From positions 237,008 to 301,007 of the IMG/VR virus record IMGVR_UViG_3300036770_007539: a stretch of DNA of 64,000 nt. One strand, 5' to 3'. The position numbers were made by a program, and so were the translations under genes. The notes beneath the pieces were generated by a model. It was given only the letters and a program-made list of their open reading frames with translations, made no database searches and had not been told where the DNA came from. Positions 33,635-57,200 of this stretch are shown one piece after another (positions within the stretch are counted from its first letter, which is position 1; every line of letters begins with the position of its first letter).

Positions 33635-33642
33635 GCGCGGGT

Positions 33643-35408: not shown

Positions 35409-35433
35409 ATATTGTCGTGTTTGCGTGCGTAAC

Positions 35434-38683: not shown

Positions 38684-38717
38684 TAGGGTGTTCGTTTCTG
38701 CGTGAATCTGTGCAGCC

Positions 38718-38873: not shown

Positions 38874-38894
38874 TTCTCATAGAAGGGAGGTTAC

Positions 38895-39200
38895 ATGCAA
38901 CAGATTTGTGGAAGATGCTCCGGAAGGGAGAGTCATTCCTGTTGCCCTGATTGCAGGGGAAAGGGCTGGCTTTCCCGCGCGGACGTTCGCGTTCTTCGCT
39001 TGAAGCAGGCGGCATTCTGTTTGCTTCACGAGAAGGCGCGCGAGCATTGGCTCACGCTGAGTGAGCCGCGTCCGCGCCAGGAGTCCTTCGTGCTGGACTA
39101 CGTGTTCAAGCACGAGCAATGGTACTTCGAGACGATCGTCTCGAAGTTTACCCCGGAGCAGAAGCGCACGCTTCTGCGTCGGTTCCCCTGCAATCCCTGA
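38895..39200 (+). CDS. Hypothetical protein with a DnaJ-type Zn motif
   Basis: CGRCSGR..CPDCRGKG. Confidence 0.6.
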   Translation: MQQICGRCSGRESHSCCPDCRGKGWLSRADVRVLRLKQAAFCLLHEKAREHWLTLSEPRPRQESFVLDYVFKHEQWYFETIVSKFTPEQKRTLLRRFPCNP

Positions 39201-39307
39201 ACCGGGTAGAGCGAGCCCTCGCAAGGGGGCTCGTTCCCTACAACCGGATCTGGATCGTGATTGATCTAGGTTCGATTATAGGGATTACCCCTATTGAAAG
39301 GAGGAGC

Positions 39308-39445
39308 ATGAAGTTTCTGGAAAAGCTCTCGAATCGATTGCCCTACGTCGTTCAAGAGTCCCCGCTCGACCCGATCACTTGGATCTTTGCGGTCCCTTTG
39401 CTGGTCCTTTACGGGATTGGCTACATTGTCGGGGGATTGACGTGA
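39308..39445 (+). CDS. Small membrane peptide
   Basis: GAGGAG RBS; hydrophobic C-terminal half. Confidence 0.5.
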   Translation: MKFLEKLSNRLPYVVQESPLDPITWIFAVPLLVLYGIGYIVGGLT

Positions 39446-39615
39446 AAGACGACTTCCTCGACGATATCATCGCAAAGATCGACTCTCTTCGCATCGAGGA
39501 GTGCGAGAGCGGGGCGATCATTCGCAAGCCGGAGGTGAGCGACTTCAAGCGTCCCTCCCTTCTACCCAAGATCATCAACATGCGATCCTTGCTGGTCGAT
39601 TCTAGCAAGTCGTGA
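39442..39615 (+). CDS. Hypothetical protein
   Basis: GTG start overlapping the upstream stop. Confidence 0.45.
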   Translation: MKDDFLDDIIAKIDSLRIEECESGAIIRKPEVSDFKRPSLLPKIINMRSLLVDSSKS

Positions 39616-39621
39616 ACGGCA

Positions 39622-39687
39622 GCATCCCCTCGTGTGGTTGCGAGCACCTGAAAAGGTGGACAGGTTCGATTCCTGTGGGATGCACTA
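39622..39687 (+). ncRNA. tRNA-like element 4 (compact cloverleaf)
   Basis: GCATCCC/GGGATGC; CTCG-TGTGGTTG-CGAG; CACC-TGAAAA-GGTG; ACAGG-TTCGATT-CCTGT; ends ACTA. Confidence 0.75.
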
Positions 39688-39747
39688 CCGCGTCGGACGG
39701 ATTCCGATATCTCTTGAATGGGGGCAAAGCTCCCGGAAGGATTCTTC

Positions 39748-40131
39748 ATGTCGAATGATGACCGTATCGAGCGATTTGCTCGCTCGATCGCCTTGAAGCT
39801 GTACAACGATTCATGGTCCGAGAACGACCTCAAGTACTTTCTCGTACCCCGCCCGCCGCCTGCGTGGGTGGTTTGCAATGTTGCAGCTTCCAATGCGTTC
39901 ATTAGAGGCGGCGAACCTCTGGATCGAGAGGGCATGATCGCTCTTGCTGGTGATTGTGCAAGGAAAATCTTTGCAATCTTCCAGGAGGAGATGTTCATAG
40001 ATTCGGAGGTGACTGTTCCATCTCCCCTCTACCAGCAGGAAGATATCGAGCAGGCGATCTTGACCATCCCTGCGAGGGTGGACGAGGCTCTCGAAGAAGC
40101 GAAGAAACCCCCGATTCGTGCCATCGCATGA
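39748..40131 (+). CDS. Hypothetical protein
   Basis: RBS after a structured leader. Confidence 0.6.
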   Translation: MSNDDRIERFARSIALKLYNDSWSENDLKYFLVPRPPPAWVVCNVAASNAFIRGGEPLDREGMIALAGDCARKIFAIFQEEMFIDSEVTVPSPLYQQEDIEQAILTIPARVDEALEEAKKPPIRAIA

Positions 40132-40293
40132 GTTTGGTGTGGTATCGTCCCTGGCTCCCCTCTTCGGAGGGTCAAGCCGGAGGCACCCCTTCGGGTGAAT
40201 ATCTTTGGAGCCTGCTTGCAAGTTTCTTGTAGGCAGGTTCGAGGGATTATCTCTCGACCGATACCGGACGGATATCCGGCAAAGGGAGACATC

Positions 40294-40629
40294 ATGTACG
40301 ATGATGATGTGCTCGAAGCTCTGCTGGTGCTCTTGACTGAGCATCAGCGGTTGGAGAGGCTTCTGAACGCTCAGAAGTCTCGTGGGATCGCCTTCGAATG
40401 CCTTCTCCGCCAGCAGAAAGCTGTCGAGAAGGCTCTCTTCTCTCGCACGATGCGGGGGAAGATTCGCCGCCAGCTCCGCGACGCCGCCGACAAGGCGGCA
40501 GTCGAGAAGATGCACGCAGCCGCCGCCAAGAAGCTGCGAGAGGCAGAAGCTGAGAAGCGTTGGGAGGCGGAGGAGCGAATGAAGCAAACGTGGCGAGAGC
40601 TTGGCGCGGTCGCCGCCAAATTTCCGTAG
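40294..40629 (+). CDS. Coiled-coil hypothetical protein
   Basis: GGGAG RBS; Glu/Lys/Arg/Ala-rich. Confidence 0.6.
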   Translation: MYDDDVLEALLVLLTEHQRLERLLNAQKSRGIAFECLLRQQKAVEKALFSRTMRGKIRRQLRDAADKAAVEKMHAAAAKKLREAEAEKRWEAEERMKQTWRELGAVAAKFP

Positions 40630-40795
40630 TGTTCTAGATCGAATCCGTCCCATCGCGTTCCCCTTCGGGGTGAGCGCGATGGGGCGACCCTTCATGGGAA
40701 TATCTTTGGAAGCTACCTGCAAGTTTCTTGCAGGTAGCTTCGAGGGATTGTCCCTTGATTGAAACCAGGCAAATACCTGGTCTTTTGGAGGCATC

Positions 40796-41086
40796 ATGGG
40801 CATCATCATCGAAGTTGTGAACCACCCCTCTGCTAACGAAAAAACAAAATGGTGGATGATTGAGACGTTGGAGAACGTCTTCAACATCTCCTTGACTGCT
40901 GAGGAGGATCGCCAGTTGGATATGGTGATGGAGAATTTGCCCGTGGGAGGTACGATTCGTATCTCTCACGACAGTCTTCCTGTGGAGTACTTACTTCACC
41001 GAGCGCAGGAACGAGACGTTCCTTACTCTTGCGGTGAGGAATGCTGCGGAATCGAATCCTACGAATGGGTTCGGTTGTTGACATGA
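40796..41086 (+). CDS. Hypothetical protein with CGEECCG motif
   Basis: GGAGG RBS; paralog of 34899..35111. Confidence 0.65.
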   Translation: MGIIIEVVNHPSANEKTKWWMIETLENVFNISLTAEEDRQLDMVMENLPVGGTIRISHDSLPVEYLLHRAQERDVPYSCGEECCGIESYEWVRLLT

Positions 41087-41206
41087 CTTGGGAGGATCTT
41101 GGGGGAGTGGCAACGTTGCTGCTCCTCTTTCTGATGGTTCTCTTTGCGTGAAGTCCTGTCCGGGGCGAGGTTGAGCCGAAAGGTTCCCTCGTTCCGGGTC
41201 TTTTCT

Positions 41207-41444
41207 GCGCTACACTGGCTATTTCTTTGGAGATCATGCATGTTCAGATTCTTTTTTGTAATCAAAATCTTTCAGTGTTTTTCCTTTTTCTTTTTTCACA
41301 ACATAAGAGAAATAAACAACAATGATAAATGTGGTTTCAATAAACGATTTCTAACGATCATTTCTTTTCAAAGAGACATGAATGTTCAGAGCCTATGCAG
41401 CCCTGATTGTGTTATCAAACGTTCGTTTAGTTCTTAGCTAGGGC
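41207..41444. repeat. AT-rich spacer element 3
   Basis: GCGCTACACTGGCT ... AGCCTATGCAGC ... GCTAGGGC. Confidence 0.75.
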
Positions 41445-41479
41445 ATAAAGCGCGTTAGATCGTGAATATAGGCGTGCGC

Positions 41480-41595
41480 TTGACAAGTAGCTGATCGTTG
41501 CTAGTATGTAGGGTGTGAGAGGGAGAGTGTGAACGGAAACGCTAGCAAGCGCGAACGGGCTAGCGGTTGACAACGGCTCGAGCGTGGTGTATACT
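41480..41595 (+). promoter_or_regulatory. Tandem sigma70-like promoters, unit 4
   Basis: TTGACA 41480-N16-TAGTAT; TTGACA 41567-N17-TATACT. Confidence 0.8.
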
Positions 41596-41615
41596 GCATC
41601 ACGGTAGGAGGAAGC

Positions 41616-41789
41616 ATGTACGTCATTCAGGTAGGCAGGGGACCCAAGGGTTCGTATCGTACCCGCTACACGTTCAGTGCGGAGGATTGGACCAAAGCAA
41701 GCTTCTACTACGCTTGCATCAATGTGGGGTACGGGTACAAGAAGCGCCTTGTGCGCGATGGCAAGGTGATCGCACGCTGCTACAGCTGA
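41616..41789 (+). CDS. 57 aa basic protein (MYVIQVGRGPKGSY...)
   Basis: AGGAGG RBS; hand-translated, below the ORF-track cutoff. Confidence 0.6.
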   Translation: MYVIQVGRGPKGSYRTRYTFSAEDWTKASFYYACINVGYGYKKRLVRDGKVIARCYS

Positions 41790-41803
41790 AAGGACAAGTG
41801 AGC

Positions 41804-41959
41804 ATGAAAGTAACGCCTGCAATCGTCAAGGCTCAGATTCGTGCGGCGAGGGCGCAAGCCTCTCGCCTGAAGAAGATGATTGCGCTGCTGGAGCAGCGCG
41901 ACCGCGCATACAGGCACTTGGAGGAGCTTGGTGATAGATTGGCTCACTTGAAGAAGTGA
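41804..41959 (+). CDS. Small coiled-coil protein
   Basis: AAGGA RBS. Confidence 0.5.
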   Translation: MKVTPAIVKAQIRAARAQASRLKKMIALLEQRDRAYRHLEELGDRLAHLKK

Positions 41960-42068
41960 GCCGGAATGGGCGAGCCCTTGCGGGCTCGTTCCCTGCAATC
42001 GGACCTGGATCGTCACTGATCTAGGTTCGACTCCAGGGAATCTTTCCTGGTCTTTCGGAGGTGTGTTT

Positions 42069-42530
42069 ATGGTCAAGGTCGTCATCATGCAAGGTGTCCC
42101 TGGTTCGGGCAAGTCGAGCTACGTCAAGTCGCTGCGACCCGTGGCGACGGTGGTCTGCTCGGCGGATACGTTCTTCGAGTCGTGGAGCCCGGAAACGGGT
42201 GCTACCTATAACTTCGACCCGTCCAAGCTCGGCGAGGCGCACGGCGAGTGCCTGTTGAGTTTCGTGGACGCCATGGAATATGCCAACCAAGACGGCGATA
42301 CGGTGGTGGTGGATAACACCAACACCACCGCCATGGAGATTGCACCCTACATGGCGCTCGCGAACGCCTACGGGTGCGAGGTTGAGATCGTGCGAGTCCA
42401 GTGCGACCCCGAGATCGCCGCTGCTCGCAACATTCACGGCGTTCCGCTGGCTTCGATCCGCCGCATGGCAGACAACATCGCGAACTTCCACGCCCCGCCA
42501 TTCTGGCGGTTCAAGCTGACGGAAGTGTGA
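42069..42530 (+). CDS. P-loop kinase (AAA_33 / polynucleotide kinase / N4BP2-like)
   Basis: GVPGSGKS Walker A; SADTFF; VVVDNTN; ARNIHGVP. Confidence 0.85.
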   Translation: MVKVVIMQGVPGSGKSSYVKSLRPVATVVCSADTFFESWSPETGATYNFDPSKLGEAHGECLLSFVDAMEYANQDGDTVVVDNTNTTAMEIAPYMALANAYGCEVEIVRVQCDPEIAAARNIHGVPLASIRRMADNIANFHAPPFWRFKLTEV

Positions 42531-42632
42531 ACTAGGACGGGCGAGCCTGCAAGGGCTCGCTCCCTGCAATCGGGATTCGATACGGATCGAATCTCGATTC
42601 TAGGGAATGTCCCCTAGCAACATGGAGGCTTT

Positions 42633-42890
42633 ATGCCCTTGTTCGTTTCTTTCGAGGATGACAACATCGACCCCACCTACGCCGACGCTTCCGACGCGGT
42701 GATCGTTTCTGCGCTGCACGATGCGGCGTTGGAAACCAATCCGTGTGTGGGTCGCGGAGTGCGGCATCGTGCTCCGGTCGCGCCTCGCACCGAAAAGGAG
42801 ATCATCGCCTTCGCCAAGGTGATGGGATGGCGAACGGAAGGATCGGGGAGTGATCTTGTGATCTACCCCGCTGTTTCCGAGGATGACTGA
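42633..42890 (+). CDS. Hypothetical protein (paralog of 47019..47270)
   Basis: MPLFVSF.D...DPTYA shared. Confidence 0.7.
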   Translation: MPLFVSFEDDNIDPTYADASDAVIVSALHDAALETNPCVGRGVRHRAPVAPRTEKEIIAFAKVMGWRTEGSGSDLVIYPAVSEDD

Positions 42891-42963
42891 TAGGACGGGC
42901 GAGCCCCTTGGCAACAAGGGGCTCGCATCTCTCGACACTCAATCCGAAACGTGAAAGGCTGAT

Positions 42964-43128
42964 GTGGATCCGAAAGAAAAAAAGCAATCTATGTTGGACC
43001 GAATGAACGCGAATAACGCGGAGATTCATCGGAAGATGAAAGAAGCTGCGGAGAAGAATGGGGAAATGGATTCCTCGCTGCGCGAGGCTATTCTCAAGAT
43101 CGGAGCAAAACCCTCTTCGGAGGGTTGA
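42964..43128 (+). CDS. 54 aa hypothetical protein
   Basis: Hand-translated; ends PSSEG inside a repeat hairpin. Confidence 0.45.
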   Translation: MDPKEKKQSMLDRMNANNAEIHRKMKEAAEKNGEMDSSLREAILKIGAKPSSEG

Positions 43129-43185
43129 GCGCGGGCACCAATCGCCGCAAGGTGCGGCGATGATCAAACGTGAAAGGCTGGAATA

Positions 43186-43443
43186 ATGTTCTCGTTGAAA
43201 AATGTTTCAGTTCAGCGGACATTCATCCTGATGATCGGGGATCGTATTCAAGGCGTCGCCAAAAGCGAGCAAGAACTACGCCCCATTGCTAAGGAGGCGT
43301 GGCGTCGGTACGGGGTCGCGCGCCCTCAATCTCCCGGAAAGGTTTTCGTGGTAGAAACCACGATTCCCTTTTTGAAGGGAATCGAATGGGTGGAGACTAC
43401 ACCACCGAAGTTCGTGTGCGATATCGACCTGGATAGTGATTGA
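43186..43443 (+). CDS. Hypothetical protein
   Basis: 85 aa ORF. Confidence 0.55.
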   Translation: MFSLKNVSVQRTFILMIGDRIQGVAKSEQELRPIAKEAWRRYGVARPQSPGKVFVVETTIPFLKGIEWVETTPPKFVCDIDLDSD

Positions 43444-43526
43444 TCCAGGTTCGATGAAGGAAGTTTGAACCACAATGAGAAGCGAGCCCTCGCAAGGGGG
43501 CTTGCTTCCTAGACAAAGGAAGCTCC

Positions 43527-43988
43527 ATGACGTTATCAAGAGATGTCATGATCGAAGCATACAACGATGCGGTGGCAGCAGCATACGGGGCAATCCGTTC
43601 GCGCTGCCCTGTAGAACTGGCTACCGCTGCCGATCTTCTCGCAAAAACTTCACCTTCGGAGGAATACTTCGATAATCACGCCATCACTCAGCACAAGACC
43701 TTGACGCATCACGTCGAGTTTTATCGTGCTCAAGAACGCGACGACGACTTTTTGAATGCTCTGTTCGACGAGTTTGCCGACAATCACGACATGGATCTCG
43801 ACGACGACGACGCAGCTAGTTTCGCTCGTAGTTGTGTAAACAACTACGGCTCGAGCTTTCTTGTTTATCAAGAGGCGCGAGGTTCGTTTCCTGGTGGCGA
43901 ATGTACGGCGGGGGGAATCGCCTCTGCCTGGAATATCATTCGCGATCAGATCAAGTTTGCAAAGAAGGAAAAGGAGGTATTGCCATGA
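43527..43988 (+). CDS. Hypothetical acidic protein
   Basis: AAGGAAG RBS; 153 aa. Confidence 0.6.
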   Translation: MTLSRDVMIEAYNDAVAAAYGAIRSRCPVELATAADLLAKTSPSEEYFDNHAITQHKTLTHHVEFYRAQERDDDFLNALFDEFADNHDMDLDDDDAASFARSCVNNYGSSFLVYQEARGSFPGGECTAGGIASAWNIIRDQIKFAKKEKEVLP

Positions 43989-44398
43989 ACAAGTACGCCA
44001 GCATCAAGGAATACGTCGAAGCTCTCTACCGAGAGGGCAACAATCAGGTTGCGGATACGTTGCAGCGTATCCGTTCGGGCGAGTCCAACGACGTTTCCGA
44101 GGTTTTCAAACCTACGGAAGCTCTCCGAAACGCAGGCTTCGAGGTAATGCCTCAAGAAGTCACCGATCCGGTCCTGGAAGCCTTCGGATTGCGCTCTTTC
44201 GGAGAGGGTGCTTTTGCGGTATACGACATGTATGGTCGAACCCCTTATCACAAGCTCTCCAGTGCGGAGATTCTGGAGCGTTTCCGTGCCAAGACGGTCA
44301 CGCATGAAGTCGATGTTCTTTGCGAGTTTCTTCGCTACTATCTCGAAGGCGTTTTTCGTCGCGCCATGTACGAAGGCGAGCACTATCAAAAGAAGTAA
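43985..44398 (+). CDS. Hypothetical protein
   Basis: AAGGAGG RBS; ATGA coupling. Confidence 0.65.
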   Translation: MNKYASIKEYVEALYREGNNQVADTLQRIRSGESNDVSEVFKPTEALRNAGFEVMPQEVTDPVLEAFGLRSFGEGAFAVYDMYGRTPYHKLSSAEILERFRAKTVTHEVDVLCEFLRYYLEGVFRRAMYEGEHYQKK

Positions 44399-44525
44399 CT
44401 GAATCGTAAGGGCGAGCCTCTTCGGGGGCTCGCTCCCTGCAATCGAATATTGACTCCCGGCATGTTCTGGGATACAGTCGATGTTCGATTCTAGGGAGTT
44501 TCCCCTAGTTTCTTCGGAGGAAAGC

Positions 44526-44735
44526 ATGCGTTGTTTCATGTATGGCGAAGTTCACACGATGGACGGCAAGCGCAAGATGGTGCGACGTTACTTCGACGGA
44601 TCGGGGAACGTCTACGCAGCTGCACTTCAAGAACTTTACAAGCGTAAAGACAAGGGTTCCCCTTGGAGAGGTGATGCAGTCAACGTCATCACTCCTTTGG
44701 GACAGAGGGTGATCGTCGAAGTTCCTCATCTGTAA
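44526..44735 (+). CDS. Hypothetical protein
   Basis: GGAGG RBS after a switch-like leader. Confidence 0.6.
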   Translation: MRCFMYGEVHTMDGKRKMVRRYFDGSGNVYAAALQELYKRKDKGSPWRGDAVNVITPLGQRVIVEVPHL

Positions 44736-44788
44736 CCAATCTCAACACCTGGAGCATGTGTCTAAACTGCTCCTTTCCAAAGGAGAAT

Positions 44789-44914
44789 ATGTCCAAACGC
44801 AAGAACTCCGATGAAGTTCTCGAAGCTCGAATCGCTCATCGTCTCGCCATGATTGCCGCTTTGGAGGCGGAAATCGCGGAACTTCGCAAGCAACAAGGAA
44901 AGGATAACCAATGA
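44789..44914 (+). CDS. 41 aa coiled-coil peptide
   Basis: AAAGGAG RBS; hand-translated. Confidence 0.5.
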   Translation: MSKRKNSDEVLEARIAHRLAMIAALEAEIAELRKQQGKDNQ

Positions 44915-45189
44915 CCGCTCGATCTGCTCGTCGACAGCACTCCAAGTATCTGCGTGAGATGGGTGTGCCCTTCATCATGCGCCAGAGTCTCGCCAAGACT
45001 CGCTACCAAGGATTGATGGATGACCATTACTTGAGTCGAAAAACTCAGCTGGTCACTACCTACTACGACAGCAACGGTTGCGATTGCTGTCCTCCTTCCA
45101 AGATTCAATATTGGGAGGTGGTGGTGCAGAAAAAGACCTATCGAATCCAAACGGAAGATGGTCGAATCCAATCTTGCCTCAAGTTCTGA
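44911..45189 (+). CDS. Hypothetical protein
   Basis: ATGA coupling; 92 aa. Confidence 0.55.
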   Translation: MTARSARRQHSKYLREMGVPFIMRQSLAKTRYQGLMDDHYLSRKTQLVTTYYDSNGCDCCPPSKIQYWEVVVQKKTYRIQTEDGRIQSCLKF

Positions 45190-45237
45190 GGCTTGGGGAC
45201 GCATCTGGGGCTGAACGGTCCTGGGTGCGTCCCCGAA

Positions 45238-45489
45238 GCGCTACATTGGCTCAACAGTGATCTTTGCATGTTCAGAACGTTCTTTATGCAAAAGCATCTT
45301 TTTTCTTTCAATGATTGCTATTTCTTCTTTCAAGTAACGACATGAATAATCAATGAATGACAAGTATCTTTCAAACAAAGAACTTTCAAATCATATATCT
45401 TTTCAACCAGATCTTTGTTCGTTCAGAGCCTATGCAGTCCTGACTTTTTCACTGGCTTTTTGACGGTTTTCGTCCCTTCTGGCTAGGGC
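45238..45489. repeat. AT-rich spacer element 4
   Basis: GCGCTACATTGGCT ... AGCCTATGCAGT ... GCTAGGGC. Confidence 0.75.
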
Positions 45490-45522
45490 TAGATCGCTTG
45501 TTTTCGCGCATATTCGCGCGCC

Positions 45523-45649
45523 TTGACAATCGGCGGATCGTTGCTAGTATGTAGGGTGTGAGAGAGAGCACGAACGAACGAATGAACGAACGAACGCTAG
45601 CACGACGCTAGCGCGATGCGTTTGACGCGGCTCGATTCGATGCTACGTT
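45523..45649 (+). promoter_or_regulatory. Tandem sigma70-like promoters, unit 5
   Basis: TTGACA 45523-N16-TAGTAT; TTGACG 45622-N16-TACGTT. Confidence 0.75.
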
Positions 45650-45683
45650 GCAAGTGTCGCCGATACATGGCGAGGGAGGCAAT

Positions 45684-46157
45684 ATGTGGATTGACCAGCG
45701 CGAGATCGACCGAGAGAACGAGAACTACAGCCTGGAGTCGCACCAGGAGGTAGTTCAGGAACAGGCTCGGAAAGAGATGATCGCGAGCTTGACCAAGCTC
45801 TGGGAGGAGACGGATCGCAAGATCGACGGCAAACGCGAAGCTCTCACGAGTGAGAGCTTCGACGAATACATCCGTCGGATCGCAGATGATAACGCCTATG
45901 AGAAGCGCGAAGCTCTCTCGGAGAAGCTCGGACGCAAACTCACCCGTGATGAGGAGCACGAAATCTTTCGCGAGGAGAAGGATAGCATCATTCAAAAGAT
46001 CAATGGCGAGATCGAGATCCTGGTCGCCAAGCTCGACATGATCGAAACGCAACTTCGCAGCCTGGGTGCTCGCAAGGCACGTCCTTACGAGCACTGGAAC
46101 GAGGAGGAGCACATCGTTCAGTATCTGGAAACCAGGAACGACAACCGCGACTACTGA
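45684..46157 (+). CDS. Acidic coiled-coil protein (paralog of 53676..54170)
   Basis: Shared LGAR..RPYEH.NE.E..YLE.R..NDR C-terminus. Confidence 0.7.
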   Translation: MWIDQREIDRENENYSLESHQEVVQEQARKEMIASLTKLWEETDRKIDGKREALTSESFDEYIRRIADDNAYEKREALSEKLGRKLTRDEEHEIFREEKDSIIQKINGEIEILVAKLDMIETQLRSLGARKARPYEHWNEEEHIVQYLETRNDNRDY

Positions 46158-46212
46158 ACCCAAGATCCCGGCTCGCCCTTCGGGGCGGGTCGGGTTCGAC
46201 AACGGAGGAATC

Positions 46213-46485
46213 ATGGAAAAGATTGCACGAGTGGTTGAGCACCCCGAAGCCCAAAAGTACGACCTGCGATGCAACTATCATCGGGGCGTCCTGGTGGACG
46301 TGCCTTCGGACAAGGTTCTGCGAGGGTACGATGGCGGTCTGTACGCCACCGTGGACGGTGAGTGGTACAGCGTTCATCCGTCCAATACTTCCAACCTGAT
46401 CGGAGCCCTGGGTATTCGATACCAGCTCCGAGAGGAAGGCTCGGAGGGAGACATGATCTCCTTCCTGCAAGCGCAAACCGACTGA
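46213..46485 (+). CDS. Hypothetical protein
   Basis: GGAGG RBS. Confidence 0.6.
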   Translation: MEKIARVVEHPEAQKYDLRCNYHRGVLVDVPSDKVLRGYDGGLYATVDGEWYSVHPSNTSNLIGALGIRYQLREEGSEGDMISFLQAQTD

Positions 46486-46587
46486 TCTGGACGGGCGAGC
46501 CCGCAAGGGCTCGCTCCCTGCAATCGGGATTCGATACGGATCGAATCTCGATTCTAGGGAATGTCCCCTAGCAACGGAGGTATTGTG

Positions 46588-46908
46588 ATGGGCAAACTGG
46601 CAGGATCGATGTGGAGGATCAATAAGTCGAGCATGGTGGTTCCCCTCCAGCCTGTCGAGGACGCGGATGCGTATTGGTTTGGCTATGCTGAACTTGACGA
46701 GGGAGACACGGTAATCATCCTCGGTGAACCGGTCCCCACGGTCGATTCAGACCCCGCTAAGAAGCACCACAGCTACGTCCCTGTCGAGTTTCGTAACGGT
46801 TACGCGCCTTTTTTCGGGTGGCGCAACGGTTATGTGTCCAACTACAAGGGTTACATGAACGCGACCTACTTCATCTGCGAATCTATCTGGATGGAGAGAG
46901 TAGGGTAA
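46588..46908 (+). CDS. Hypothetical protein (SH3-like?)
   Basis: GGAGG RBS after a switch-like leader. Confidence 0.55.
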   Translation: MGKLAGSMWRINKSSMVVPLQPVEDADAYWFGYAELDEGDTVIILGEPVPTVDSDPAKKHHSYVPVEFRNGYAPFFGWRNGYVSNYKGYMNATYFICESIWMERVG

Positions 46909-47018
46909 TATCCAGAACTAGGACGGGCGAGCCCGCAAGGGCTCGCTCCCTGCAATCGGGATTCGACACTTGTCGAGTTTCGATTCTAGGGAATGTCCCC
47001 TAGCACCAAGGAGGCTTT

Positions 47019-47270
47019 ATGCCGCTTTTCGTTTCTTTCCAGGATTCCAGCACCGATCCCACCTACGCGCTCGCCGATGATGTGGTCCTCGTCGAGAGCA
47101 GCGACGACGATGACAACAATCCTTGCGTCGGGCGCTCGGTTCGTCGCACCGCACCCGTCGCTCCGATGACGGCGGAAGAGATTCGCGCTTTCGCTATGGT
47201 CATGGGTTGGTCATGGGAGACGCACCGTGATGGGACACTGGTCCTATCTACGGGCGTCCAAGATATCTGA
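47019..47270 (+). CDS. Hypothetical protein (paralog of 42633..42890)
   Basis: Same leader and N-terminus. Confidence 0.7.
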   Translation: MPLFVSFQDSSTDPTYALADDVVLVESSDDDDNNPCVGRSVRRTAPVAPMTAEEIRAFAMVMGWSWETHRDGTLVLSTGVQDI

Positions 47271-47389
47271 TAGGAAGGGCGAGCCCTCGCAAGGGGGCTC
47301 GCTCCCTGCAATCGAACCTTGATGCCGAAAACATCGGAGCTATGTCAAGGTTCGATTCTAGGGATGTCCCTAGTGTTACGGAGGTTTCC

Positions 47390-47848
47390 ATGAACGACGA
47401 TTATCTGCACGTCAACCAGTTCAGCTTCAACTTCCGCCAGAATCAGTACGAGATCCTGGAACTCAAGGGTGTCAACATCTACGAAGATAGGACCATCTGG
47501 TGCTCTCATGCCGATGATGGGGAAGGCTGGGATGTATTCATCTGCTACCAGCCCGAAGATGACGACAATACTGGGACCATCAATCCTAGCCATCTCAACA
47601 AGTCTTGGGCTAAGAAGTTCAAGACTGAGATGCAAGAAGATCAGGACGGTGAACCCGCTCCTTGGAACATGGGCAGGAATCTGAGCATGAGCGAGGTTCA
47701 AAGCATGGTTCGCTACTTCAGGCGAAAGATACTGGTGGGTGTCCTTCGGCAGAAACGCGACCGTGAACTCGGTTACTGTGACGAGGATCTCAACCGAGAA
47801 AAGTGGTCCAACTACTGGATCGGCGAAGGCTATACCGAATACTACTGA
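47390..47848 (+). CDS. Hypothetical protein (paralog of 52511..52957)
   Basis: Shared GEGWDVFI.Y.PEDDD, SWAKKFKTEMQEDQDG, MVRYFRR. Confidence 0.75.
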   Translation: MNDDYLHVNQFSFNFRQNQYEILELKGVNIYEDRTIWCSHADDGEGWDVFICYQPEDDDNTGTINPSHLNKSWAKKFKTEMQEDQDGEPAPWNMGRNLSMSEVQSMVRYFRRKILVGVLRQKRDRELGYCDEDLNREKWSNYWIGEGYTEYY

Positions 47849-47902
47849 AACAACGCACCTGGGCATGTGTCTAAACTGCCCTTTTCTTGAAAGGAGAATG
47901 TC

Positions 47903-48193
47903 ATGAACAATGATTTTCGTGCTTCCATTCTTGCCGCTCGTGAAGATTGGCGCATATCCAATCTGATCAAAGCAATCCAGTCTCATCTGGACGGTGAGGA
48001 AATCTATCTTCCCCGATTCGAGGAAGATCAGCAGGGCGGTCATTTCGTGCTCTCGGAATGGATCAAGATCCCTGCTTCCCGAATCATGAGAATATTGGGA
48101 GTCGACCATCCCCGCGATTTGGGATGGGGGCGTGATGGTGAACCACCGACTCCGAATCCTTCGGCAATTCCTTTCAAAGGAGAATGTCAATGA
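47903..48193 (+). CDS. Hypothetical protein
   Basis: AAAGGAG RBS. Confidence 0.6.
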   Translation: MNNDFRASILAAREDWRISNLIKAIQSHLDGEEIYLPRFEEDQQGGHFVLSEWIKIPASRIMRILGVDHPRDLGWGRDGEPPTPNPSAIPFKGECQ

Positions 48194-48390
48194 ACGTGAA
48201 TGAGTTTCTGAAAGAGGCATTGGAGCCGCAACCTCAAATGCGCAAGGGGCAGCATTTCATCAATCGTCTTACGGTGGTGAAGCCCTGGCTATCTTACAAG
48301 CTCCAGCAGACAGGCTTGGATCCATACTACGTTGACAGCAAGCTGCCTGCTGCAATCCAATACACCGTAGAAAACTGGGATCTCTTCTAA
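48190..48390 (+). CDS. Hypothetical protein
   Basis: AAAGGAG RBS; ATGA coupling. Confidence 0.6.
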   Translation: MNVNEFLKEALEPQPQMRKGQHFINRLTVVKPWLSYKLQQTGLDPYYVDSKLPAAIQYTVENWDLF

Positions 48391-48400
48391 AAGAGATACC

Positions 48401-48461
48401 GCATCGACTGGTCCGCACCCGCAAGGGTGCGGAGGAGGTTCGATTCCTCCACGATGCACTA
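48401..48461 (+). ncRNA. Anticodon-less tRNA-like element 5
   Basis: GCATCG/CGATGC; CTGGT linker; GCAA hairpin; GGAGG-TTCGATT-CCTCC; ends ACTA. Confidence 0.75.
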
Positions 48462-48513
48462 AGCACACAAGCTGTTGCATTGGGCAATTGCAAGTGCTTT
48501 CGTGAGGTGAGTC

Positions 48514-48891
48514 ATGGATTTCGTTCTTTCCCGCAAGACTGGCAGCGACATGTACGGATTCTGCCCCCTTTTCCAGTCTTTGGTCATCGGGAATCTGCGC
48601 GTCTCCATCCAAGCGAGTCGAACCCACTTCTCCTCTCCCCAAGCAGACTTCTCCAACTCGGACTTGTATTCTGAGTTCGAAGTGGCGCTGCTGACGCTCC
48701 GAGATGGCAAGTGGTTTCATCCGGAGAAGGACAAGCGGTTCGCTCAAACCGAATGGGCAAAGTACTACTGGAAAGACTACGATGACGTAGCTGCTTACGT
48801 ACCGCGTCATCTGGTGGCGCAAATGATAACTGACCTGCGCTTGGATGCGGCTTCAAGGCGAAAGCGTATGAAGCCGATTGCCAAGAAGTGA
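48514..48891 (+). CDS. Hypothetical protein
   Basis: GAGGTG RBS; 125 aa. Confidence 0.65.
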   Translation: MDFVLSRKTGSDMYGFCPLFQSLVIGNLRVSIQASRTHFSSPQADFSNSDLYSEFEVALLTLRDGKWFHPEKDKRFAQTEWAKYYWKDYDDVAAYVPRHLVAQMITDLRLDAASRRKRMKPIAKK

Positions 48892-48956
48892 CCGCACAGC
48901 CTCTCGGCTCGCCCTTCGGGGCGGGTCGGGAGGCTTTTTTTTTTGCGAAGAAGTAG

Positions 48957-49210
48957 AGCGGCTTCGCCGCTCCAATGTTTCTATCAATTTCTTTTTTTCA
49001 AAGCCATATTCATTTCAATTTCAAAAACAAATCATTTCTTTGAAATCTATTCAGATTCAATTACAAGATACTTTGATTTCAAACAGTATCTTTGATCATC
49101 TTATTCCATACAATGTTTTTCCATTCTTTTCTAACAAAGCCAATGTAGCGCTGACATTCCGTCAATGGTTTTTGTCCCGTTTTTTGCCTTTTACCCCTTC
49201 GGGCTAGGGC
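48957..49210. repeat. AT-rich spacer element 5 (variant)
   Basis: GAGCGGC-TTC-GCCGCTC CAATG ... AGCCAATGTAGCGC ... GCTAGGGC. Confidence 0.7.
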
Positions 49211-49234
49211 AGAATACGTCTAAACGCACGCGAT

Positions 49235-49360
49235 TTGACAAGCGCAAGATCGTTGCTAGTATGTAGGGTGTGAGAACGAATGCGAACACGCAAACGCTCT
49301 CGTCGAGAGTAGCACGGCGCGATTGACAATGTTTGACAATCGCGGATTCGTGGCTACAAT
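49235..49360 (+). promoter_or_regulatory. Tandem sigma70-like promoters, unit 6
   Basis: TTGACA 49235-N16-TAGTAT; TTGACA 49333-N16-TACAAT. Confidence 0.8.
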
Positions 49361-49397
49361 ACAGATGCGGCAATCAAGCCGCGTTTCGGAGGTTGTC

Positions 49398-49853
49398 ATG
49401 TCCAACACGTTCAAGATCGATCCCTCGTTCCTCGTCAAGTTCGTTTCCTCCGTCGTGGATGCTGCGAACAAGCGGATTCCGGTCAAGGATCTGGCTGGAA
49501 TCCTGCAAAGGCTCGACAGCGATCAGGGGCGCGTGGCTGCGTCGTTCGACGCCGACGATCTGGAAAAGGTGATCGTCGGCACGGTCAACAACCTGCACGG
49601 ATTCGACATTCGTGCGGGTCGTTCGGGTGGCGTCGGGCGCGTGGAGATGTTCAAGGGTGGAGCATCCGACGAGCCGAGCGGTGTCGCCGCGCAGATCGCG
49701 GCACGTCTGCGTGAATACTGCAAGGCGGCTGGAAAGCCCTTGGAGATCCCCGAGTCCCGGCGGATCGTCAACGCTTACCTGAACGATCTGATCTTGCAGC
49801 AGGCACCGGGCAATCTGACGGCGGAGGATCTGCTGTCTCGATACGGCGGCTGA
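49398..49853 (+). CDS. Promoter-proximal protein (paralog of 51807..52232)
   Basis: Shared VDAAN.R.PV, RAGRSGGVGR, FKGG, NAYL. Confidence 0.75.
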   Translation: MSNTFKIDPSFLVKFVSSVVDAANKRIPVKDLAGILQRLDSDQGRVAASFDADDLEKVIVGTVNNLHGFDIRAGRSGGVGRVEMFKGGASDEPSGVAAQIAARLREYCKAAGKPLEIPESRRIVNAYLNDLILQQAPGNLTAEDLLSRYGG

Positions 49854-49982
49854 TCGGGTGAGGGAGCGAGCCTTTAGGGGCTCGCTCCCTGTAACCGAGG
49901 GTTGACACCGAAAACATCGGATCTATGTCAATCTTCGGTTACAGGGAGCAATTCCGCTATCCTGTATTCTGGGAGTGTTTGC

Positions 49983-50243
49983 ATGAGAATGCATGAGATT
50001 CTGGCACCGATCCGCGCGCACGCACGTCTCGCTCCGCTGGATCGTCTGTCCGTGGATGGTGCGAAGATCCTCGCCGACATGGTGTACGCCATGCGTGGCG
50101 CGGATCGTCGCTGTCAAGAGCACGCGGCGGATTGTCTCGCGGCTCTGCGTCCGCGTCTCTACGATCTCTGGGACGTGGCTCGCGCTGTCGAGCCGTGTCC
50201 AGAGTGGCTGAAGCCACTGGCGGAGTACGGTCCTCGACACTGA
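49983..50243 (+). CDS. Hypothetical protein
   Basis: GGGAG RBS after a switch-like leader. Confidence 0.55.
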   Translation: MRMHEILAPIRAHARLAPLDRLSVDGAKILADMVYAMRGADRRCQEHAADCLAALRPRLYDLWDVARAVEPCPEWLKPLAEYGPRH

Positions 50244-50316
50244 AACAAGGGCGGGGAACGAGCCCGAATGGGCTCGTTCCCCGCCTGTCTCTCATCTCAA
50301 ACCTGGAGGTTTTCAC

Positions 50317-50655
50317 ATGCGTATGCACCCCACTACTGCCATTCTCGTGACCCTCAACACCTTCGCCCGCGAATACGTCGAGTATTACGGAGGGGTGAAT
50401 CACCTGCTGGACGTTCCTGTTCTCGCGGAACAGGGGCGTGCGCTGGAGGCGGTCATCACCGCCATCTACAAGGGAATCGTCGATGGCAGTATCCCTGCCA
50501 ACGAGCGCACACGTCAAAGCGCGCAACAGTGGAGCGAGGGGTTGATTACCCTTCCAGAATCTCTGGCATTCCTGATCTCTGAGATGAAGCCGCCGAAAGG
50601 CATTCCCCTTCACGGTGAACGCTTGGCGGTCATTCTTGGAGGCTTCTTGCCTTAG
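50317..50655 (+). CDS. Hypothetical protein
   Basis: GGAGG RBS. Confidence 0.6.
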   Translation: MRMHPTTAILVTLNTFAREYVEYYGGVNHLLDVPVLAEQGRALEAVITAIYKGIVDGSIPANERTRQSAQQWSEGLITLPESLAFLISEMKPPKGIPLHGERLAVILGGFLP

Positions 50656-50802
50656 TCATCGACACGAGAGCGAGCCCTCGCAAGGGGCTCGCTCCCTGCA
50701 ATCGAACCTTGACGAGCACTTGTTGCTGTGATAACGTCAAGGTTCGATTCTAGGGGATTGACAATTCTGTGTGAGCTAACCTTTCCCTCAAAGGAGGTAT
50801 CA

Positions 50803-51237
50803 ATGAACATCGAAATCGACCCGATCAGCATGGCTCTCATCAAGAACCCTCGTGCCGTTGCCAAGGCGATGGTGGTCCTGTTTTCTTTCCAGACAGCTAA
50901 GGAGAGAAGCACGGGCATCACCAGGGAATCCAACGGCAAGGGCTTCTCTTCTTACGACGATAAGAAGTGCAGCCGCTACGCACGATGGATCCTCCGCATA
51001 AGTAACAACGCCTCTGACGAGGAGGTGCGGACCAAAATCCGCAACTACCTGACGCACGGTCATCAACCCAACAACCGTGACCTGACCGGTACTCATCTGG
51101 ATGACGCTCGTATGCGCTCTCTCAAGTACGTCGGTCAGCTGAAGCGGTATGCTGACAGCAAGAAGGCTGCCAGCGCGGCGGTCACTGCACCGGTCACGGC
51201 TCCTACGGAGGCGAATGATGCAGCTGACGATTCTTGA
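50803..51237 (+). CDS. Hypothetical protein
   Basis: AAGGAGG RBS. Confidence 0.65.
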   Translation: MNIEIDPISMALIKNPRAVAKAMVVLFSFQTAKERSTGITRESNGKGFSSYDDKKCSRYARWILRISNNASDEEVRTKIRNYLTHGHQPNNRDLTGTHLDDARMRSLKYVGQLKRYADSKKAASAAVTAPVTAPTEANDAADDS

Positions 51238-51293
51238 CTATCTGATCCGTAGCAATGCGGATTGTGTAGTCCAGCAAGCTTGGAAGTGAAAGT

Positions 51294-51333
51294 GAGCGAG
51301 TCCCTGGCAACGGGGGCTCGCTCCTTTTTTTTG
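51294..51333 (+). terminator. Rho-independent terminator
   Basis: GAGCGAG..CTCGCTC stem followed by a T tract. Confidence 0.7.
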
Positions 51334-51344
51334 TGGATTTTTCA

Positions 51345-51600
51345 GCGCTAGGGCGGCTTTGCCGCCCCAATGAGATCAATGTTTGGAGCCCGATCTATTC
51401 CAATGCCCTATTTCTATTCCAACAATGCTTCTATATTCTTCTATCTATCTCTCTTTGCTTCTTTCAATTCATTCTTACAATGAACTTAAACAATCTCTTC
51501 AATGATCAATGTTTGGAGCCAATGTAGGTTTTCCATTGTTTTGGGTGATTTTTAATCTCAGAATTGGTGATTTCCCGAAAAAATGCTTTTTAGCTAGGGC
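51345..51600. repeat. AT-rich spacer element 6 (variant)
   Basis: GGGCGGC-TTT-GCCGCCC CAATG; several CAATG boxes; AGCCAATGTAG; GCTAGGGC. Confidence 0.7.
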
Positions 51601-51624
51601 ATGTTGCGCGTATGGGCGCACGAT

Positions 51625-51652
51625 TTGACAAGCGGGGGATCGTTGCTAGTAT
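51625..51652 (+). promoter_or_regulatory. Sigma70-like promoter, unit 7
   Basis: TTGACA-N16-TAGTAT. Confidence 0.8.
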
Positions 51653-51806
51653 GCAAGGTGTGAGAGAGACGCTAACCGATACGCGATAACGCGATAGGGC
51701 AACGATACGCATTTTCGCGTGTTTATGTTGGCGTGGGCTGAAGCTAGGATTAAGCGATGGTTGCTTAATGCGTGTTTCAGTGGTTGTTTGTTATTCGAGG
51801 TGTATC

Positions 51807-52232
51807 ATGTTCAAGTTCGATTTTTCCGCCGTCCACAACGCTGTTGTTTCGCTCGTCGATGCTGCAAACCACCGCGTTCCGGTGGAGGGGCTTTCCAAGG
51901 ATTTGAAGGTTGCGGGATTCGATCTGGGTGAGGACGCGGACGTGGTTATCCGCGCAATTTGCGCGGCGTCTACGGTCGTGGATTTGCGGGCGGGTCGTTC
52001 TGGCGGCGTTGGTCGAAAGGAGTGGTTTAAGGGCGGGGCTAATCCTGAGCCTACGGGTGTGGGTGCAAAGATCGCCAAATCCATTCGTGAAACCGCTGGA
52101 ATTTCTCTTCCCAAGGGTGATGAGCGTTCGGCTTCTCTGGCAATTGCGAACGCATATCTGGAGGCATTGGCGACTGGAAAATGCGATCCAATGCCGCTGG
52201 CGGAGGTAATCAAGAAGTTCGGCAAGAGCTGA
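51807..52232 (+). CDS. Promoter-proximal protein (paralog of 49398..49853)
   Basis: Shared motifs as listed for 49398..49853. Confidence 0.75.
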   Translation: MFKFDFSAVHNAVVSLVDAANHRVPVEGLSKDLKVAGFDLGEDADVVIRAICAASTVVDLRAGRSGGVGRKEWFKGGANPEPTGVGAKIAKSIRETAGISLPKGDERSASLAIANAYLEALATGKCDPMPLAEVIKKFGKS

Positions 52233-55025: not shown

Positions 55026-55098
55026 GGGTCCATAACTCAATTGGTAGAGTAGCTGGCTTTTAACCAGTTTGTTGGCAGTTCGACCCTGCCTGGACCCA
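55026..55098 (+). tRNA. trnK: tRNA-Lys(UUU)
   Basis: GGGTCCA/TGGACCC acceptor; anticodon loop CTTTTAA; GGCAG-TTCGACC-CTGCC. Confidence 0.9.
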
Positions 55099-55246
55099 CA
55101 AAGAAAAAGACAAATCTAAAAGAGGAAAACATGAAAATCCTGGTATTGAACGATTCTGCGGAGGAGATTCTTTTGGCATTGAAGCCATAGATTGAAAACA
55201 CGGTTACATGCACAAGTAACTTCCTCAAACATTTGAGGGATGGAAA

Positions 55247-57164: not shown

Positions 57165-57200
57165 CAAATTCTCAAGTAACCCAATCCAAAGGATAAAGCA

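What the first reader, a model, noticed from the sequence alone, without database searches (positions are those of the whole stretch)
44451..50740. Promoter-like -35/-10 pairs hidden inside the long stems
Seen: the four longest family B copies contain TTGACT-N17-TACAGT (44451), TTGATG-N16-TATGTC (47319), TTGACA-N16-TATGTC (49882) and TTGACG-N17-TAACGT (50709). In each, the -35 box is complementary to the sequence at the -10 box. The short copies lack this insert. Inference: optional internal promoters that could be silenced by cruciform extrusion, or that generate a 5' end giving only the downstream hairpin.
Basis: partly seen in the sequence, partly recalled or inferred. Interest (0 to 1): 0.6.

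Follow-up and report, generated by a model that had tools for sequence, protein, structure and literature searches.

The report
Promoter-bearing hairpin cassettes between phage genes
A three-hairpin repeat between the small early genes of an uncultured jumbo phage sometimes carries a bacterial-type promoter at the tip of its middle hairpin, much like the promoter/stem-loop cassettes (PeSLs) known from T4-type phages; two of the four claimed promoters look credible, two look decayed, and the stems behave as RNA structures, not DNA cruciforms.

Summary
The window is the last 64 kb of a 301-kb IMG/VR jumbo-phage record. The four -35/-10-like pairs exist, at 44450, 47319, 49902 and 50709; two claimed coordinates were off, by 1 and 20 nt. 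They lie in the apical part of the middle hairpin (H2) of a three-hairpin cassette (H1-H2-H3). The cassette has 9 copies, all on the + strand, each between a stop codon and the next Shine-Dalgarno.

I scored the four against a matrix built from 29 predicted stand-alone promoters of this phage and relatives:
- B50 (TTGACG-N17-TAACGT): 15.8 bits, credible.
- B44 (TTGACT-N17-TACAGT): 11.7 bits, credible.
- B49 and B47 (TATGTC, C at -7): 5.2 and 2.1 bits, background level.

In related metagenomic phages the embedded boxes and the 17-nt spacing are kept across five unrelated spacer sequences. The same hexamers also occur as stand-alone promoters directly before genes. The stems covary strongly, with G·U far more frequent than A·C, and the sense strand folds better. 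That points to RNA structure and argues against cruciform silencing.

The closest known kind is the PeSL cassettes of T4-type phages. No transcript data exist.

The parts
44408..44508 (+). Family B copy B44, long form. H1 44411-44433, H2 about 44436-44496, H3 44491-44508. Embedded -35 TTGACT 44450-44455, 17-nt spacer forming a small hairpin, -10 TACAGT 44473-44478. The next gene starts at ATG 44527.
   Evidence: 92.3 bits. Promoter score 11.7 bits. The same subtype in relative L007 has TTGACT-N17-TAGAGT and scores 18.2 bits.
47275..47373 (+). Family B copy B47, long form. Embedded TTGATG 47319-47324, 16-nt spacer, TATGTC 47341-47346. Poor promoter match, with C at -7 and T at -35 position 5.
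   Evidence: 89.9 bits. Promoter score 2.1 bits.
49862..49945 (+). Family B copy B49, long form with the most perfect long stem and no H3. Embedded TTGACA 49902-49907, 16-nt spacer, TATGTC 49924-49929. It precedes gene 49983-50243. In three relatives the homologue of that gene is preceded by a TTGACA-N17-TAACGT copy.
   Evidence: 87.1 bits. Promoter score 5.2 bits. Orthology.
50666..50767 (+). Family B copy B50, long form. Embedded -35 TTGACG 50709-50714, 17-nt spacer with a TGn extended -10, -10 TAACGT 50732-50737. This is the best promoter candidate.
   Evidence: 90.4 bits. Promoter score 15.8 bits. Boxes are identical in L005, L007b, L009, L011 and L012 with different spacers.
39207..39294 (+). 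Family B copy B39, short form (H1, 13-bp H2 with a small loop, H3 ATAGGG/CCCTAT). No promoter module.
41966..42050 (+). Family B copy B41, short form, before the AAA_33 kinase-like gene 42063-42530. The homologous gene in L007 and L011 is preceded by a bare TTGACA-N17-TAACGT promoter instead.
42537..42617 (+). Family B copy B42, short form.
46491..46571 (+). Family B copy B46a, short form.
46923..47003 (+). Family B copy B46b, short form, before gene 47019-47270. In L007, L009, L011 and L012 the homologue of that gene is preceded by a long, TAACGT-bearing copy.
45523..45650 (+). Operon promoters that feed read-through transcripts across B46a, B46b and B47. P1 is TTGACA-N16-TAGTAT with an extended -10 and a conserved leader. 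P2 is TTGACG-N16-TACGTT at 45622.
   Evidence: (D4, D10).
49235..49360 (+). Operon promoters P1 (49235) and P2 (49333, TTGACA-N16-TACAAT), upstream of B49 and B50.
48898..48945 (+). Intrinsic terminator (17-bp stem plus T9) that ends the operon holding B46a, B46b and B47. The H1-like hairpin at 51294-51333 with a T8 run ends the next operon. H1 inside family B has no T run.

Best explanation
Family B is a composite intergenic regulatory cassette in the early, ORFan-rich block of an uncultured jumbo phage. It works like the PeSL (promoter-early stem-loop) cassettes of T4-type phages.

Anatomy. Each copy sits between a stop codon and the next Shine-Dalgarno.
- H1 is a GC-rich hairpin without a U tract, inferred to act as an attenuator or 3' stabiliser.
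- H2 is a long hairpin.
- H3 is a small hairpin just before the SD.

The optional promoter. In the long copies the tip of H2 carries a sigma-70-type promoter.
- The -35 (TTGACN) forms the top of the 5' arm.
- The 16-17-nt spacer folds into a small upper stem.
- The -10 (TAnnGT) begins in a 3'-side bulge and ends in the 3' arm. This explains the unusual '..GT' hexamers.
- I infer that B50, and probably B44, are active internal early promoters. A start about 7 nt after the -10 lies in the 3' arm of H2, so those transcripts would carry only H3 plus the SD.
- B47 and B49 have C at -7 and are weak or decayed versions. B49 corresponds by position to a TAACGT copy in relatives.

The stems. Shown: they are maintained on the sense-strand RNA, through covariation, G·U excess and strand asymmetry. 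Inferred: they act in read-through transcripts from the operon promoters as processing, stability or translation elements, for example an RNase III-type target flanked by protective hairpins. They do not act as DNA cruciforms.

Modularity. H1, short H2, the promoter and H3 are mixed and matched between related phages whose gene order is shuffled.
For: Structure.
- The covariance model finds 9 copies in the 301-kb genome, all in the window and all on the + strand.
- It finds 10 more in related contigs.
- 96.9% of cells are paired, 10 pairs carry compensatory changes, and 0 of 500 shuffles reach the observed values.
- G·U outnumbers A·C by 57 to 12.
- The sense strand is more stable in 16 of 18 copies, by 3.9 kcal/mol on average.

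Promoter.
- Scores are 15.8 bits for B50 and 11.7 for B44, against a genome 99.99th percentile of 12.6 and a training range of 9.8-22.2.
- The minus strand of the same hairpins scores 3.3 bits or less.
- Embedded TTGAC[TGA]-N17-TA[AG][CA]GT is conserved across five spacer classes in L005, L007, L009, L011 and L012.
- Bare TTGACA-N17-TAACGT and TTGACT-N17-TAGAGT sit directly before SD-ATG at L007 8380, 7746, 7350 and 6328, at L011 1775, 2001 and 2329, and at L012 908.

Modularity.
- The same gene is preceded by a short copy, a long copy or a bare promoter in different phages.
- Gene order is shuffled, with 47-95% protein identity between homologues.

Precedent.
- PeSLs have stem-loops between or overlapping the -35 and -10 boxes, a stop codon at the 5' end and an SD plus start codon at the 3' end. 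They were shown to have promoter and terminator activity (PMC2839356; PMC4122927).
Against: - There is no transcript evidence. No RNA run holds this phage.
- The host is unknown, and the 'training' promoters are themselves predictions chosen partly with a TTGAC...TA...T pattern.
- The -35-like T-x-G-A-Y is present in the short copies too, so its conservation is partly a stem feature.
- Two of the four claimed promoters fail the phage's own standard.
- There is no AT-rich UP region before the embedded -35. H1 and the lower stem lie there.
- The copies are related by descent, so the counts are not independent events.
- The RNA role of H1, H2 and H3 is inference only. No RNase III gene was found in the 301 kb.
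Confidence: 0.6

Rival explanations
1. Pure RNA element. H2 is only an RNA hairpin, for example a T7-like RNase III processing site or a stability element. The promoter likeness is a by-product of a TTGAC/GTCAA stem plus a conserved UA-containing 3' bulge, which would itself be the functional RNA motif.
For: - Covariation is strong, with G·U excess and sense-strand bias.
- Short copies have the same lower stem and T-x-G-A-Y without any promoter.
- The spacer always keeps a small hairpin with compensatory changes: AGCA/UGCU, GGCA/UGCC and GGCG/CGCC.
- B47 and B49 keep perfect hairpins but poor boxes.
Against: - The same -35, 17-nt spacing and -10 hexamers (TAACGT, TAGAGT) recur in relatives without any enclosing stem, directly before SD-ATG.
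- Most TAACGT copies, embedded and bare, also carry the extended -10 TG.
- Only the + strand scores as a promoter.
Confidence: 0.2
2. The inverted repeat extrudes as a DNA cruciform under supercoiling and thereby switches the embedded promoter off.
For: - The -35 and the -10 region lie on opposite arms of an inverted repeat.
- B49 and B50 have nearly perfect 13-20-bp lower stems, with DNA hairpin energies of -18 to -20 kcal/mol per strand.
Against: - The stems tolerate many G·T pairs, which become A·C on the other strand (57 against 12).
- The minus strand folds worse in 16 of 18 copies.
- The central part is a 16-29-nt non-palindromic region with an asymmetric bulge. From general knowledge of cruciform extrusion, this is unfavourable.
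- Several copies have DNA hairpin energies of only -5 to -12 kcal/mol.
Confidence: 0.05
3. A selfish or neutral repeat. Family B is a MITE/REP-like repeat, or merely a patch of homology that mediates recombinational shuffling of gene cassettes, with no regulatory role of its own.
For: - Gene order is shuffled and identity is mosaic between relatives, with the elements at module boundaries.
- The same element subtype occurs in different gene contexts, for example B44 and L007a.
- PeSLs are proposed to mediate such shuffling (PMC2839356).
Against: - All 9 copies here and all 10 in relatives share one orientation and one precise position, between stop codon and SD.
- Compensatory changes show selection on pairing.
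- No copy lies outside the early block of the 301-kb record.
- Shuffling and regulation are not mutually exclusive.
Confidence: 0.1

Closest known systems
PeSL (promoter-early stem-loop) cassettes of T4-type phages (RB49/phi1, PST, nt-1; Arbiol et al. 2010, PMC2839356; Comeau et al. 2014, PMC4122927)
   Same: - Repeated intergenic cassettes in ORFan-rich, plastic early regions.
- A stop codon at the 5' end and an SD plus start codon at the 3' end.
- A sigma-70-like -35/N17/-10 combined with a stem-loop that can lie between or overlap the boxes.
- G-T pairs in the stems.
- Association with modular gene shuffling.
   Different: - Three hairpins instead of one.
- The promoter is optional: 4 of 9 copies carry it, and only 2 are convincing.
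- The promoter is enclosed by a 13-20-bp lower stem that is conserved at the RNA level.
- There is no AT-rich tract before the -35.
- H1 is not a G-run/C-run stem.
- The phage is a jumbo phage (301 kb on record, about 71% complete) with no detected T4 gp23 or gp20 homologue (with uninformative controls). Its only link to T4-like phages is a virion protein 31% identical to those of T4-like cyanophages.
- Promoter and terminator activity are untested.
RNase III processing sites between early genes of phage T7/T3 (from general knowledge, not tested here)
   Same: Conserved irregular hairpins of about 20 bp with an internal loop or bulge, placed between cistrons of polycistronic early transcripts. 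After cleavage they leave a 3' hairpin on the upstream mRNA.
   Different: - No sequence relationship.
- Cleavage is not shown.
- No phage RNase III gene was found and the host is unknown.
- T7 sites do not contain promoters.
REP/BIME-type intergenic palindromic repeats of bacteria (from general knowledge)
   Same: Repeated, imperfect palindromes in intergenic regions of operons, which act on mRNA stability.
   Different: REPs occur in both orientations and genome-wide. Family B has one orientation, one 11.6-kb block, a fixed position relative to the stop codon and SD, and an optional promoter.

Membership tests
PeSL cassette | Sigma-70-like -35 and -10 boxes about 17 nt apart | tested here: inconclusive
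   Met for B50 (15.8 bits) and B44 (11.7 bits). Not met for B47 (2.1) and B49 (5.2). Absent from the five short copies. Activity is untested.
PeSL cassette | Stem-loop adjacent to, between or overlapping the promoter boxes | tested here: met
   H1 lies upstream. The upper stem lies in the spacer. The lower stem includes the -35 and the end of the -10.
PeSL cassette | [quoted passage not shown] | tested here: not met
   The 40 nt before the embedded -35 are the GC-rich H1 and the lower stem. AT-rich tracts occur only before the operon promoters P1.
PeSL cassette | Intergenic, with the upstream stop codon at the 5' end and the SD plus start codon at the 3' end | tested here: met
   True of all 9 copies.
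PeSL cassette | Concentrated in a hyperplastic region, upstream of ORFans | tested here: met
   All copies lie in window 39.2-50.8 kb, and none elsewhere in the 301 kb. Neighbouring products have no Pfam hit, apart from AAA_33 and Metallophos.
PeSL cassette | Associated with indels and shuffling of the flanked genes between close relatives | tested here: inconclusive
   Gene order is shuffled and identity is mosaic against L007, L011 and L009. No clean recombination joint inside an element was obtained. The X6 joint is best read as the paralogous B42 locus.
PeSL cassette | Demonstrated promoter and terminator activity | not testable with these tools
   There are no RNA runs. Reporter assays are needed.
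PeSL cassette | The phage that carries it is T4-type | tested here: inconclusive
   PF07068 and PF07230 gave no match, but the controls did not ring either. A virion protein is 31% identical to those of T4-like cyanophages.
T7-type RNase III processing site | Irregular hairpin of about 20 bp between cistrons of one transcript | tested here: met
   Extended H2 has 20-21 pairs with an internal mismatch or bulge, supported by covariation. It lies between the predicted operon promoters and terminators.
T7-type RNase III processing site | Cleavage by RNase III | not testable with these tools
   There are no RNA data. No RNase III gene lies in the 301 kb.
Cruciform-controlled promoter | Near-perfect DNA inverted repeat with a short centre, equally stable on both strands | tested here: not met
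   G·T 57 against A·C 12. The + strand is more stable in 16 of 18 copies. The centre is a 16-29-nt asymmetric region.
REP/MITE-like mobile repeat | Dispersed copies in both orientations | tested here: not met
   9 of 9 copies here and 10 of 10 in relatives lie in the gene orientation and at a fixed stop-to-SD position.

The most novel reading that the evidence does not exclude
A dual-coded element. The same about 60 nt would be both a sigma-70 promoter in DNA and, in read-through transcripts, a selected RNA hairpin. The base-pairing needs of the hairpin would dictate the promoter's unusual '..GT' -10 hexamers.

The 5'-CUAGGG of H3 can pair either with CCCUG/CCCUA just after H1 or with CCCUAG downstream, and both pairings covary. 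Transcripts that start at the internal promoter lack the upstream partner. They would therefore fold differently from read-through transcripts, which would couple transcript origin to the stability or translation of the next gene.
Probability: 0.2. Interest if true: 0.65.

Novelty: new variant of a known kind. Interest (0 to 1): 0.45.

Why it matters
PeSL-type cassettes have been described only in T4-type phages. They are thought to drive both the regulation and the modular shuffling of phage ORFans. This finding shows an analogous but architecturally richer cassette in an uncultured freshwater/subsurface jumbo phage lineage. It has three hairpins, an optional promoter enclosed in an RNA-selected stem, and interchangeable modules at orthologous sites.

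That suggests the promoter-plus-stem-loop cassette is a general solution in large phages. It also offers a compact natural test case for how one sequence can satisfy promoter and RNA-structure constraints at once. For annotation, it marks candidate internal start sites and processing sites in an otherwise featureless ORFan block.

Tried and rejected
- blastn of 44-51 kb against the phage collection found no match.
- Three IMG/VR pattern scans gave only chance matches or nothing (inspected).
- The search for sequencing runs found DNA runs only, from subsurface and freshwater metagenomes, and no RNA.
- Laying the DNA contigs of four runs gave no clean element-to-element deletion. The X6 joint 46575>47018 carries 21 differences on its right side and matches the arrangement at the paralogous B42 locus, so I do not count it. 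The X3 'goes back' joint is B50 mapping onto B47.
- Homologues of the gene after B47 were found, but their contigs could not be fetched. One search was a frame slip, corrected.
- T4 capsid and portal families gave no match, but the controls were silent.
- I considered a tRNA-like reading of family B, because GGTTCGATTC resembles a T loop. I rejected it because the flanks do not form a T arm and that string is the 3' arm of H2.
- I considered H1 as an intrinsic terminator. It has no T run in family B, unlike the H1-like terminators at 48898 and 51294.
- Complex prediction, structure prediction and the large representative protein search were not needed.

Full report
Context. The window is the last 64 kb of a 301,007-bp IMG/VR virus record (G000:C1:237008-301007), which CheckV rates as about 71% complete. 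It is therefore a jumbo phage.
- Minus-strand structural genes (tail fibres, virion proteins) fill the first 33 kb at 30-45% GC.
- From about 33 kb onward all genes are small, lie on the + strand and are mostly without Pfam hits. GC there is 50-63%.
- This block is cut into operons of 2.4-4 kb by a nearly identical predicted promoter. It reads TTGACA-N16-TAGTAT with an extended -10 and a conserved leader, at 33231, 35434, 35508, 38718, 41480, 45523, 49235 and 51625.
- A second promoter often lies about 100 nt downstream of the first. AT-rich DNA and true terminators lie upstream of these promoters.

The repeat. A motif search and then a covariance model found nine copies of 'family B' in the whole 301 kb.
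- All nine are in the window between 39.2 and 50.8 kb, and all are on the + strand.
- Each begins a few nucleotides after a stop codon and ends a few nucleotides before a Shine-Dalgarno and start codon.
- Each has a GC-rich hairpin without a T run (H1), a long hairpin (H2) and a small hairpin, CTAGGG-loop-CCCTAG (H3).
- Five copies are short: H2 is a 13-14-bp stem with a small loop of 4-6 nt.
- Four copies are long. Their lower stem is followed by a 3'-side bulge and a small upper stem.

Checking the observation. The four claimed motif pairs are real, but two coordinates are off: they lie at 44450, 47319, 49902 and 50709. The -35-like hexamer forms the top of the 5' arm. The short copies lack the module.

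Is the promoter likeness more than chance? I built a position matrix covering the -35, the spacer length and a 9-nt -10 region. The training set was 29 predicted stand-alone promoters of this phage and its relatives. I scored every position of the genome on both strands.

| Site | Score (bits) | Genome positions scoring as high (of 601,934) |
|---|---|---|
| B50 | 15.8 | 23 |
| B44 | 11.7 | 84 |
| B49 | 5.2 | 996 |
| B47 | 2.1 | 3,428 |

- Training promoters score 9.8-22.2 bits in leave-one-out, with a median of 19.8. The genome's 99.99th percentile is 12.6.
- B49 and B47 fall below every training promoter. Both have C at the -7 position, which from established knowledge of sigma-70 promoters is one of the two most important -10 bases.
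- The minus strand of the same hairpins scores 3.3 bits or less, so the palindrome alone does not create the match.
- The generic consensus scan lists only the 44450 site.

Relatives. IMG/VR and the phage collection gave nothing. One metagenome scan with an H1-plus-junction pattern gave four contigs. Homologues of the gene at 47019 gave more.
- The model finds ten further distinct copies in L005, L006, L007, L009, L011 and L012.
- On the 18 distinct sequences, 96.9% of cells pair and ten pairs carry compensatory double changes. No shuffle of 500 reaches any measure, and slid controls collapse.
- G·U and U·G cells outnumber A·C and C·A by 57 to 12.
- The sense strand folds more stably than the antisense strand in 16 of 18 copies, by 3.9 kcal/mol on average.
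- The copies share descent, so these are not independent events. Even so, the direction is clear: pairing is selected on the sense-strand RNA.
- A symmetric DNA cruciform would suffer from every G·T as an A·C on the other strand. DNA-parameter hairpin energies are modest. The long copies also have a 16-29-nt asymmetric centre.
- I therefore reject cruciform silencing as the likely mechanism, although only probing could exclude it.

Evidence that the boxes are promoters. In the relatives the embedded module recurs as TTGAC[T/G/A]-N17-TA[A/G][C/A]GT, with five unrelated spacer sequences.
- The spacers keep a small hairpin through compensatory changes (AGCA/UGCU, GGCA/UGCC, GGCG/CGCC). The boxes, the spacing and an extended -10 TG in most TAACGT copies stay fixed.
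- The same phages also carry bare versions with no enclosing stem, directly before SD-ATG. TTGACA-N17-TAACGT occurs at L007 8380, 7746 and 7350, at L011 1775, 2001 and 2329, and at L012 908. TTGACT-N17-TAGAGT occurs at L007 6328.
- A bare element that keeps both boxes and their spacing is hard to explain by RNA pairing.
- Orthologous positions differ between phages. The kinase-like gene (42063) follows a short copy here and a bare promoter in L007 and L011.
- The gene at 47019 follows a short copy here and a long TAACGT copy in four relatives.
- The gene at 49983 follows B49 (TATGTC, spacer 16) here and a TAACGT, spacer-17 copy in three relatives.
- So the promoter is an optional, exchangeable module, and B49 looks like a decayed version in a hairpin that stayed perfect.
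- One caution: T-x-G-A-Y at the -35 position is invariant in short copies too. The -35 is therefore partly a stem feature. The weight rests on the -10, the spacing and the bare copies.

Mechanism. Shown: the anatomy, the position, RNA-level covariation, conservation of the boxes, and modular exchange. Inferred:
- B50, and probably B44, fire as internal early promoters. With a start about 7 nt after the -10, the transcript would begin in the 3' arm of H2 and carry H3 and the SD.
- H1 attenuates read-through transcripts or stabilises their 3' ends.
- In read-through RNA, H2 is a processing or stability element. An RNase III-type target flanked by protective hairpins is the most economical guess. 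No RNase III gene lies in the 301 kb, so a host enzyme would be needed.
- The 5' arm of H3 (CUAGGG) can also pair with CCCUG/CCCUA right after H1, and both pairings covary (and direct reading of B39 and B41). Read-through and internally initiated transcripts could therefore fold differently. This is speculation.

Comparison with what is known. The closest known kind is the PeSL cassettes of T4-type phages.
- They combine sigma-70-like promoters with stem-loops that lie between or overlap the boxes.
- They have a stop codon at the 5' end and an SD and start codon at the 3' end.
- They are concentrated before ORFans in hyperplastic regions.
- They have shown promoter and terminator activity and a role in modular shuffling (PMC2839356; PMC4122927).

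Family B shares the logic and the setting. Gene order and identity between this phage and L007 are indeed mosaic, at 47-95%. It differs in several ways:
- It has three hairpins.
- The enclosing RNA-selected stem is not a PeSL feature.
- The promoter is optional.
- The AT-rich upstream tract is absent.
- The phage is not demonstrably T4-type.

I therefore file it as working like a PeSL, as a new variant rather than a member.

Limits. There are no RNA data. The host is unknown. The promoter training set is predicted, not mapped. The relatives are few and related by descent. Three further related contigs could not be fetched. The DNA-contig overlay gave no clean recombination joint.

Verdict. The 'optional internal promoter' reading is supported for two of the four sites, and the cruciform reading is not. 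Interest is moderate.

Noticed in passing
window 33667-33699, 34579-34611, 39655-39687, 48400-48461, 59368-59400: Intergenic tRNA-like mini-elements. Each has an acceptor-like stem, a GNRA-type hairpin, a T arm (GGAGG-TTCGATT-CCTCC) and a 3' tail ACGATGCACTA. ARAGORN and Rfam do not call them (sequence read). They may be RNase P/Z-type punctuation of the early transcripts.
   Followed up: no
window 44745, 47854, 52363, 52963, 54182, 54617, 56492, 57034: A second intergenic family, CACCTGGGCATGTGT[C/A]TAAACTGCCC, lies just upstream of genes (D5/D11/D14). It becomes the dominant element after 52 kb. It could be a phage-specific (middle or late) promoter or an RNA element.
   Followed up: no
window 32674-32999 and 30000-32000: About 25-30 tandem copies of an 11-nt unit (GGATAGAATAC-like) lie at the divergent junction between the minus-strand structural genes and the plus-strand early block. 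Next to them is a 2-kb stretch with GC skew -0.67. This is iteron-like and may be an origin or a regulatory array.
   Followed up: no
window 33000-52000 versus the rest: Composition is sharply split within one phage genome. The early ORFan block has 50-63% GC, against 30-45% in the structural and tRNA regions.
   Followed up: no
window 59131-59336; 55026-55099; 57081-57165: A group I intron (Rfam, 59.9 bits) and two tRNA genes, Lys-TTT and Leu-CAA.
   Followed up: no
G000:C1:30695-30880 (outside the window): The phage encodes a protein with a sigma-70 region 2 domain, in a 285-aa ORF scoring 44.9 bits. The ORF lies just downstream of a TTGACA-N16-TATGTT motif. No RNase III gene was found.
   Followed up: partly
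window family B copies, e.g. 46517-46571; alignment A3 columns 29-34 with 114-119: The CUAGGG at the 5' arm of H3 is complementary both to CCCUG/CCCUA just 3' of H1 and to CCCUAG downstream. For the first pairing, one pair covaries AU 8, GU 7, GC 3. For the second, there are compensatory ATAGGG/CCCTAT in B39 and CCAGG/CCTGG in B41. The two conserved pairings are mutually exclusive.
   Followed up: partly
window 43478-43510, 50254-50290, 51294-51333; L006 1208-1288; L005 2823-2901: H1-like hairpins also occur alone between genes, or with a T run as true operon terminators. In relatives an H1 can be followed by a different long perfect hairpin. The H1-plus-long-hairpin architecture therefore recurs with unrelated sequences.
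   Followed up: partly
L009 2640-2690 (= L010 175-225): One related copy carries a tandem duplication of TCTTGACGGG, giving two -35-like boxes. Only the second lies 17 nt from the TAACGT.
   Followed up: no
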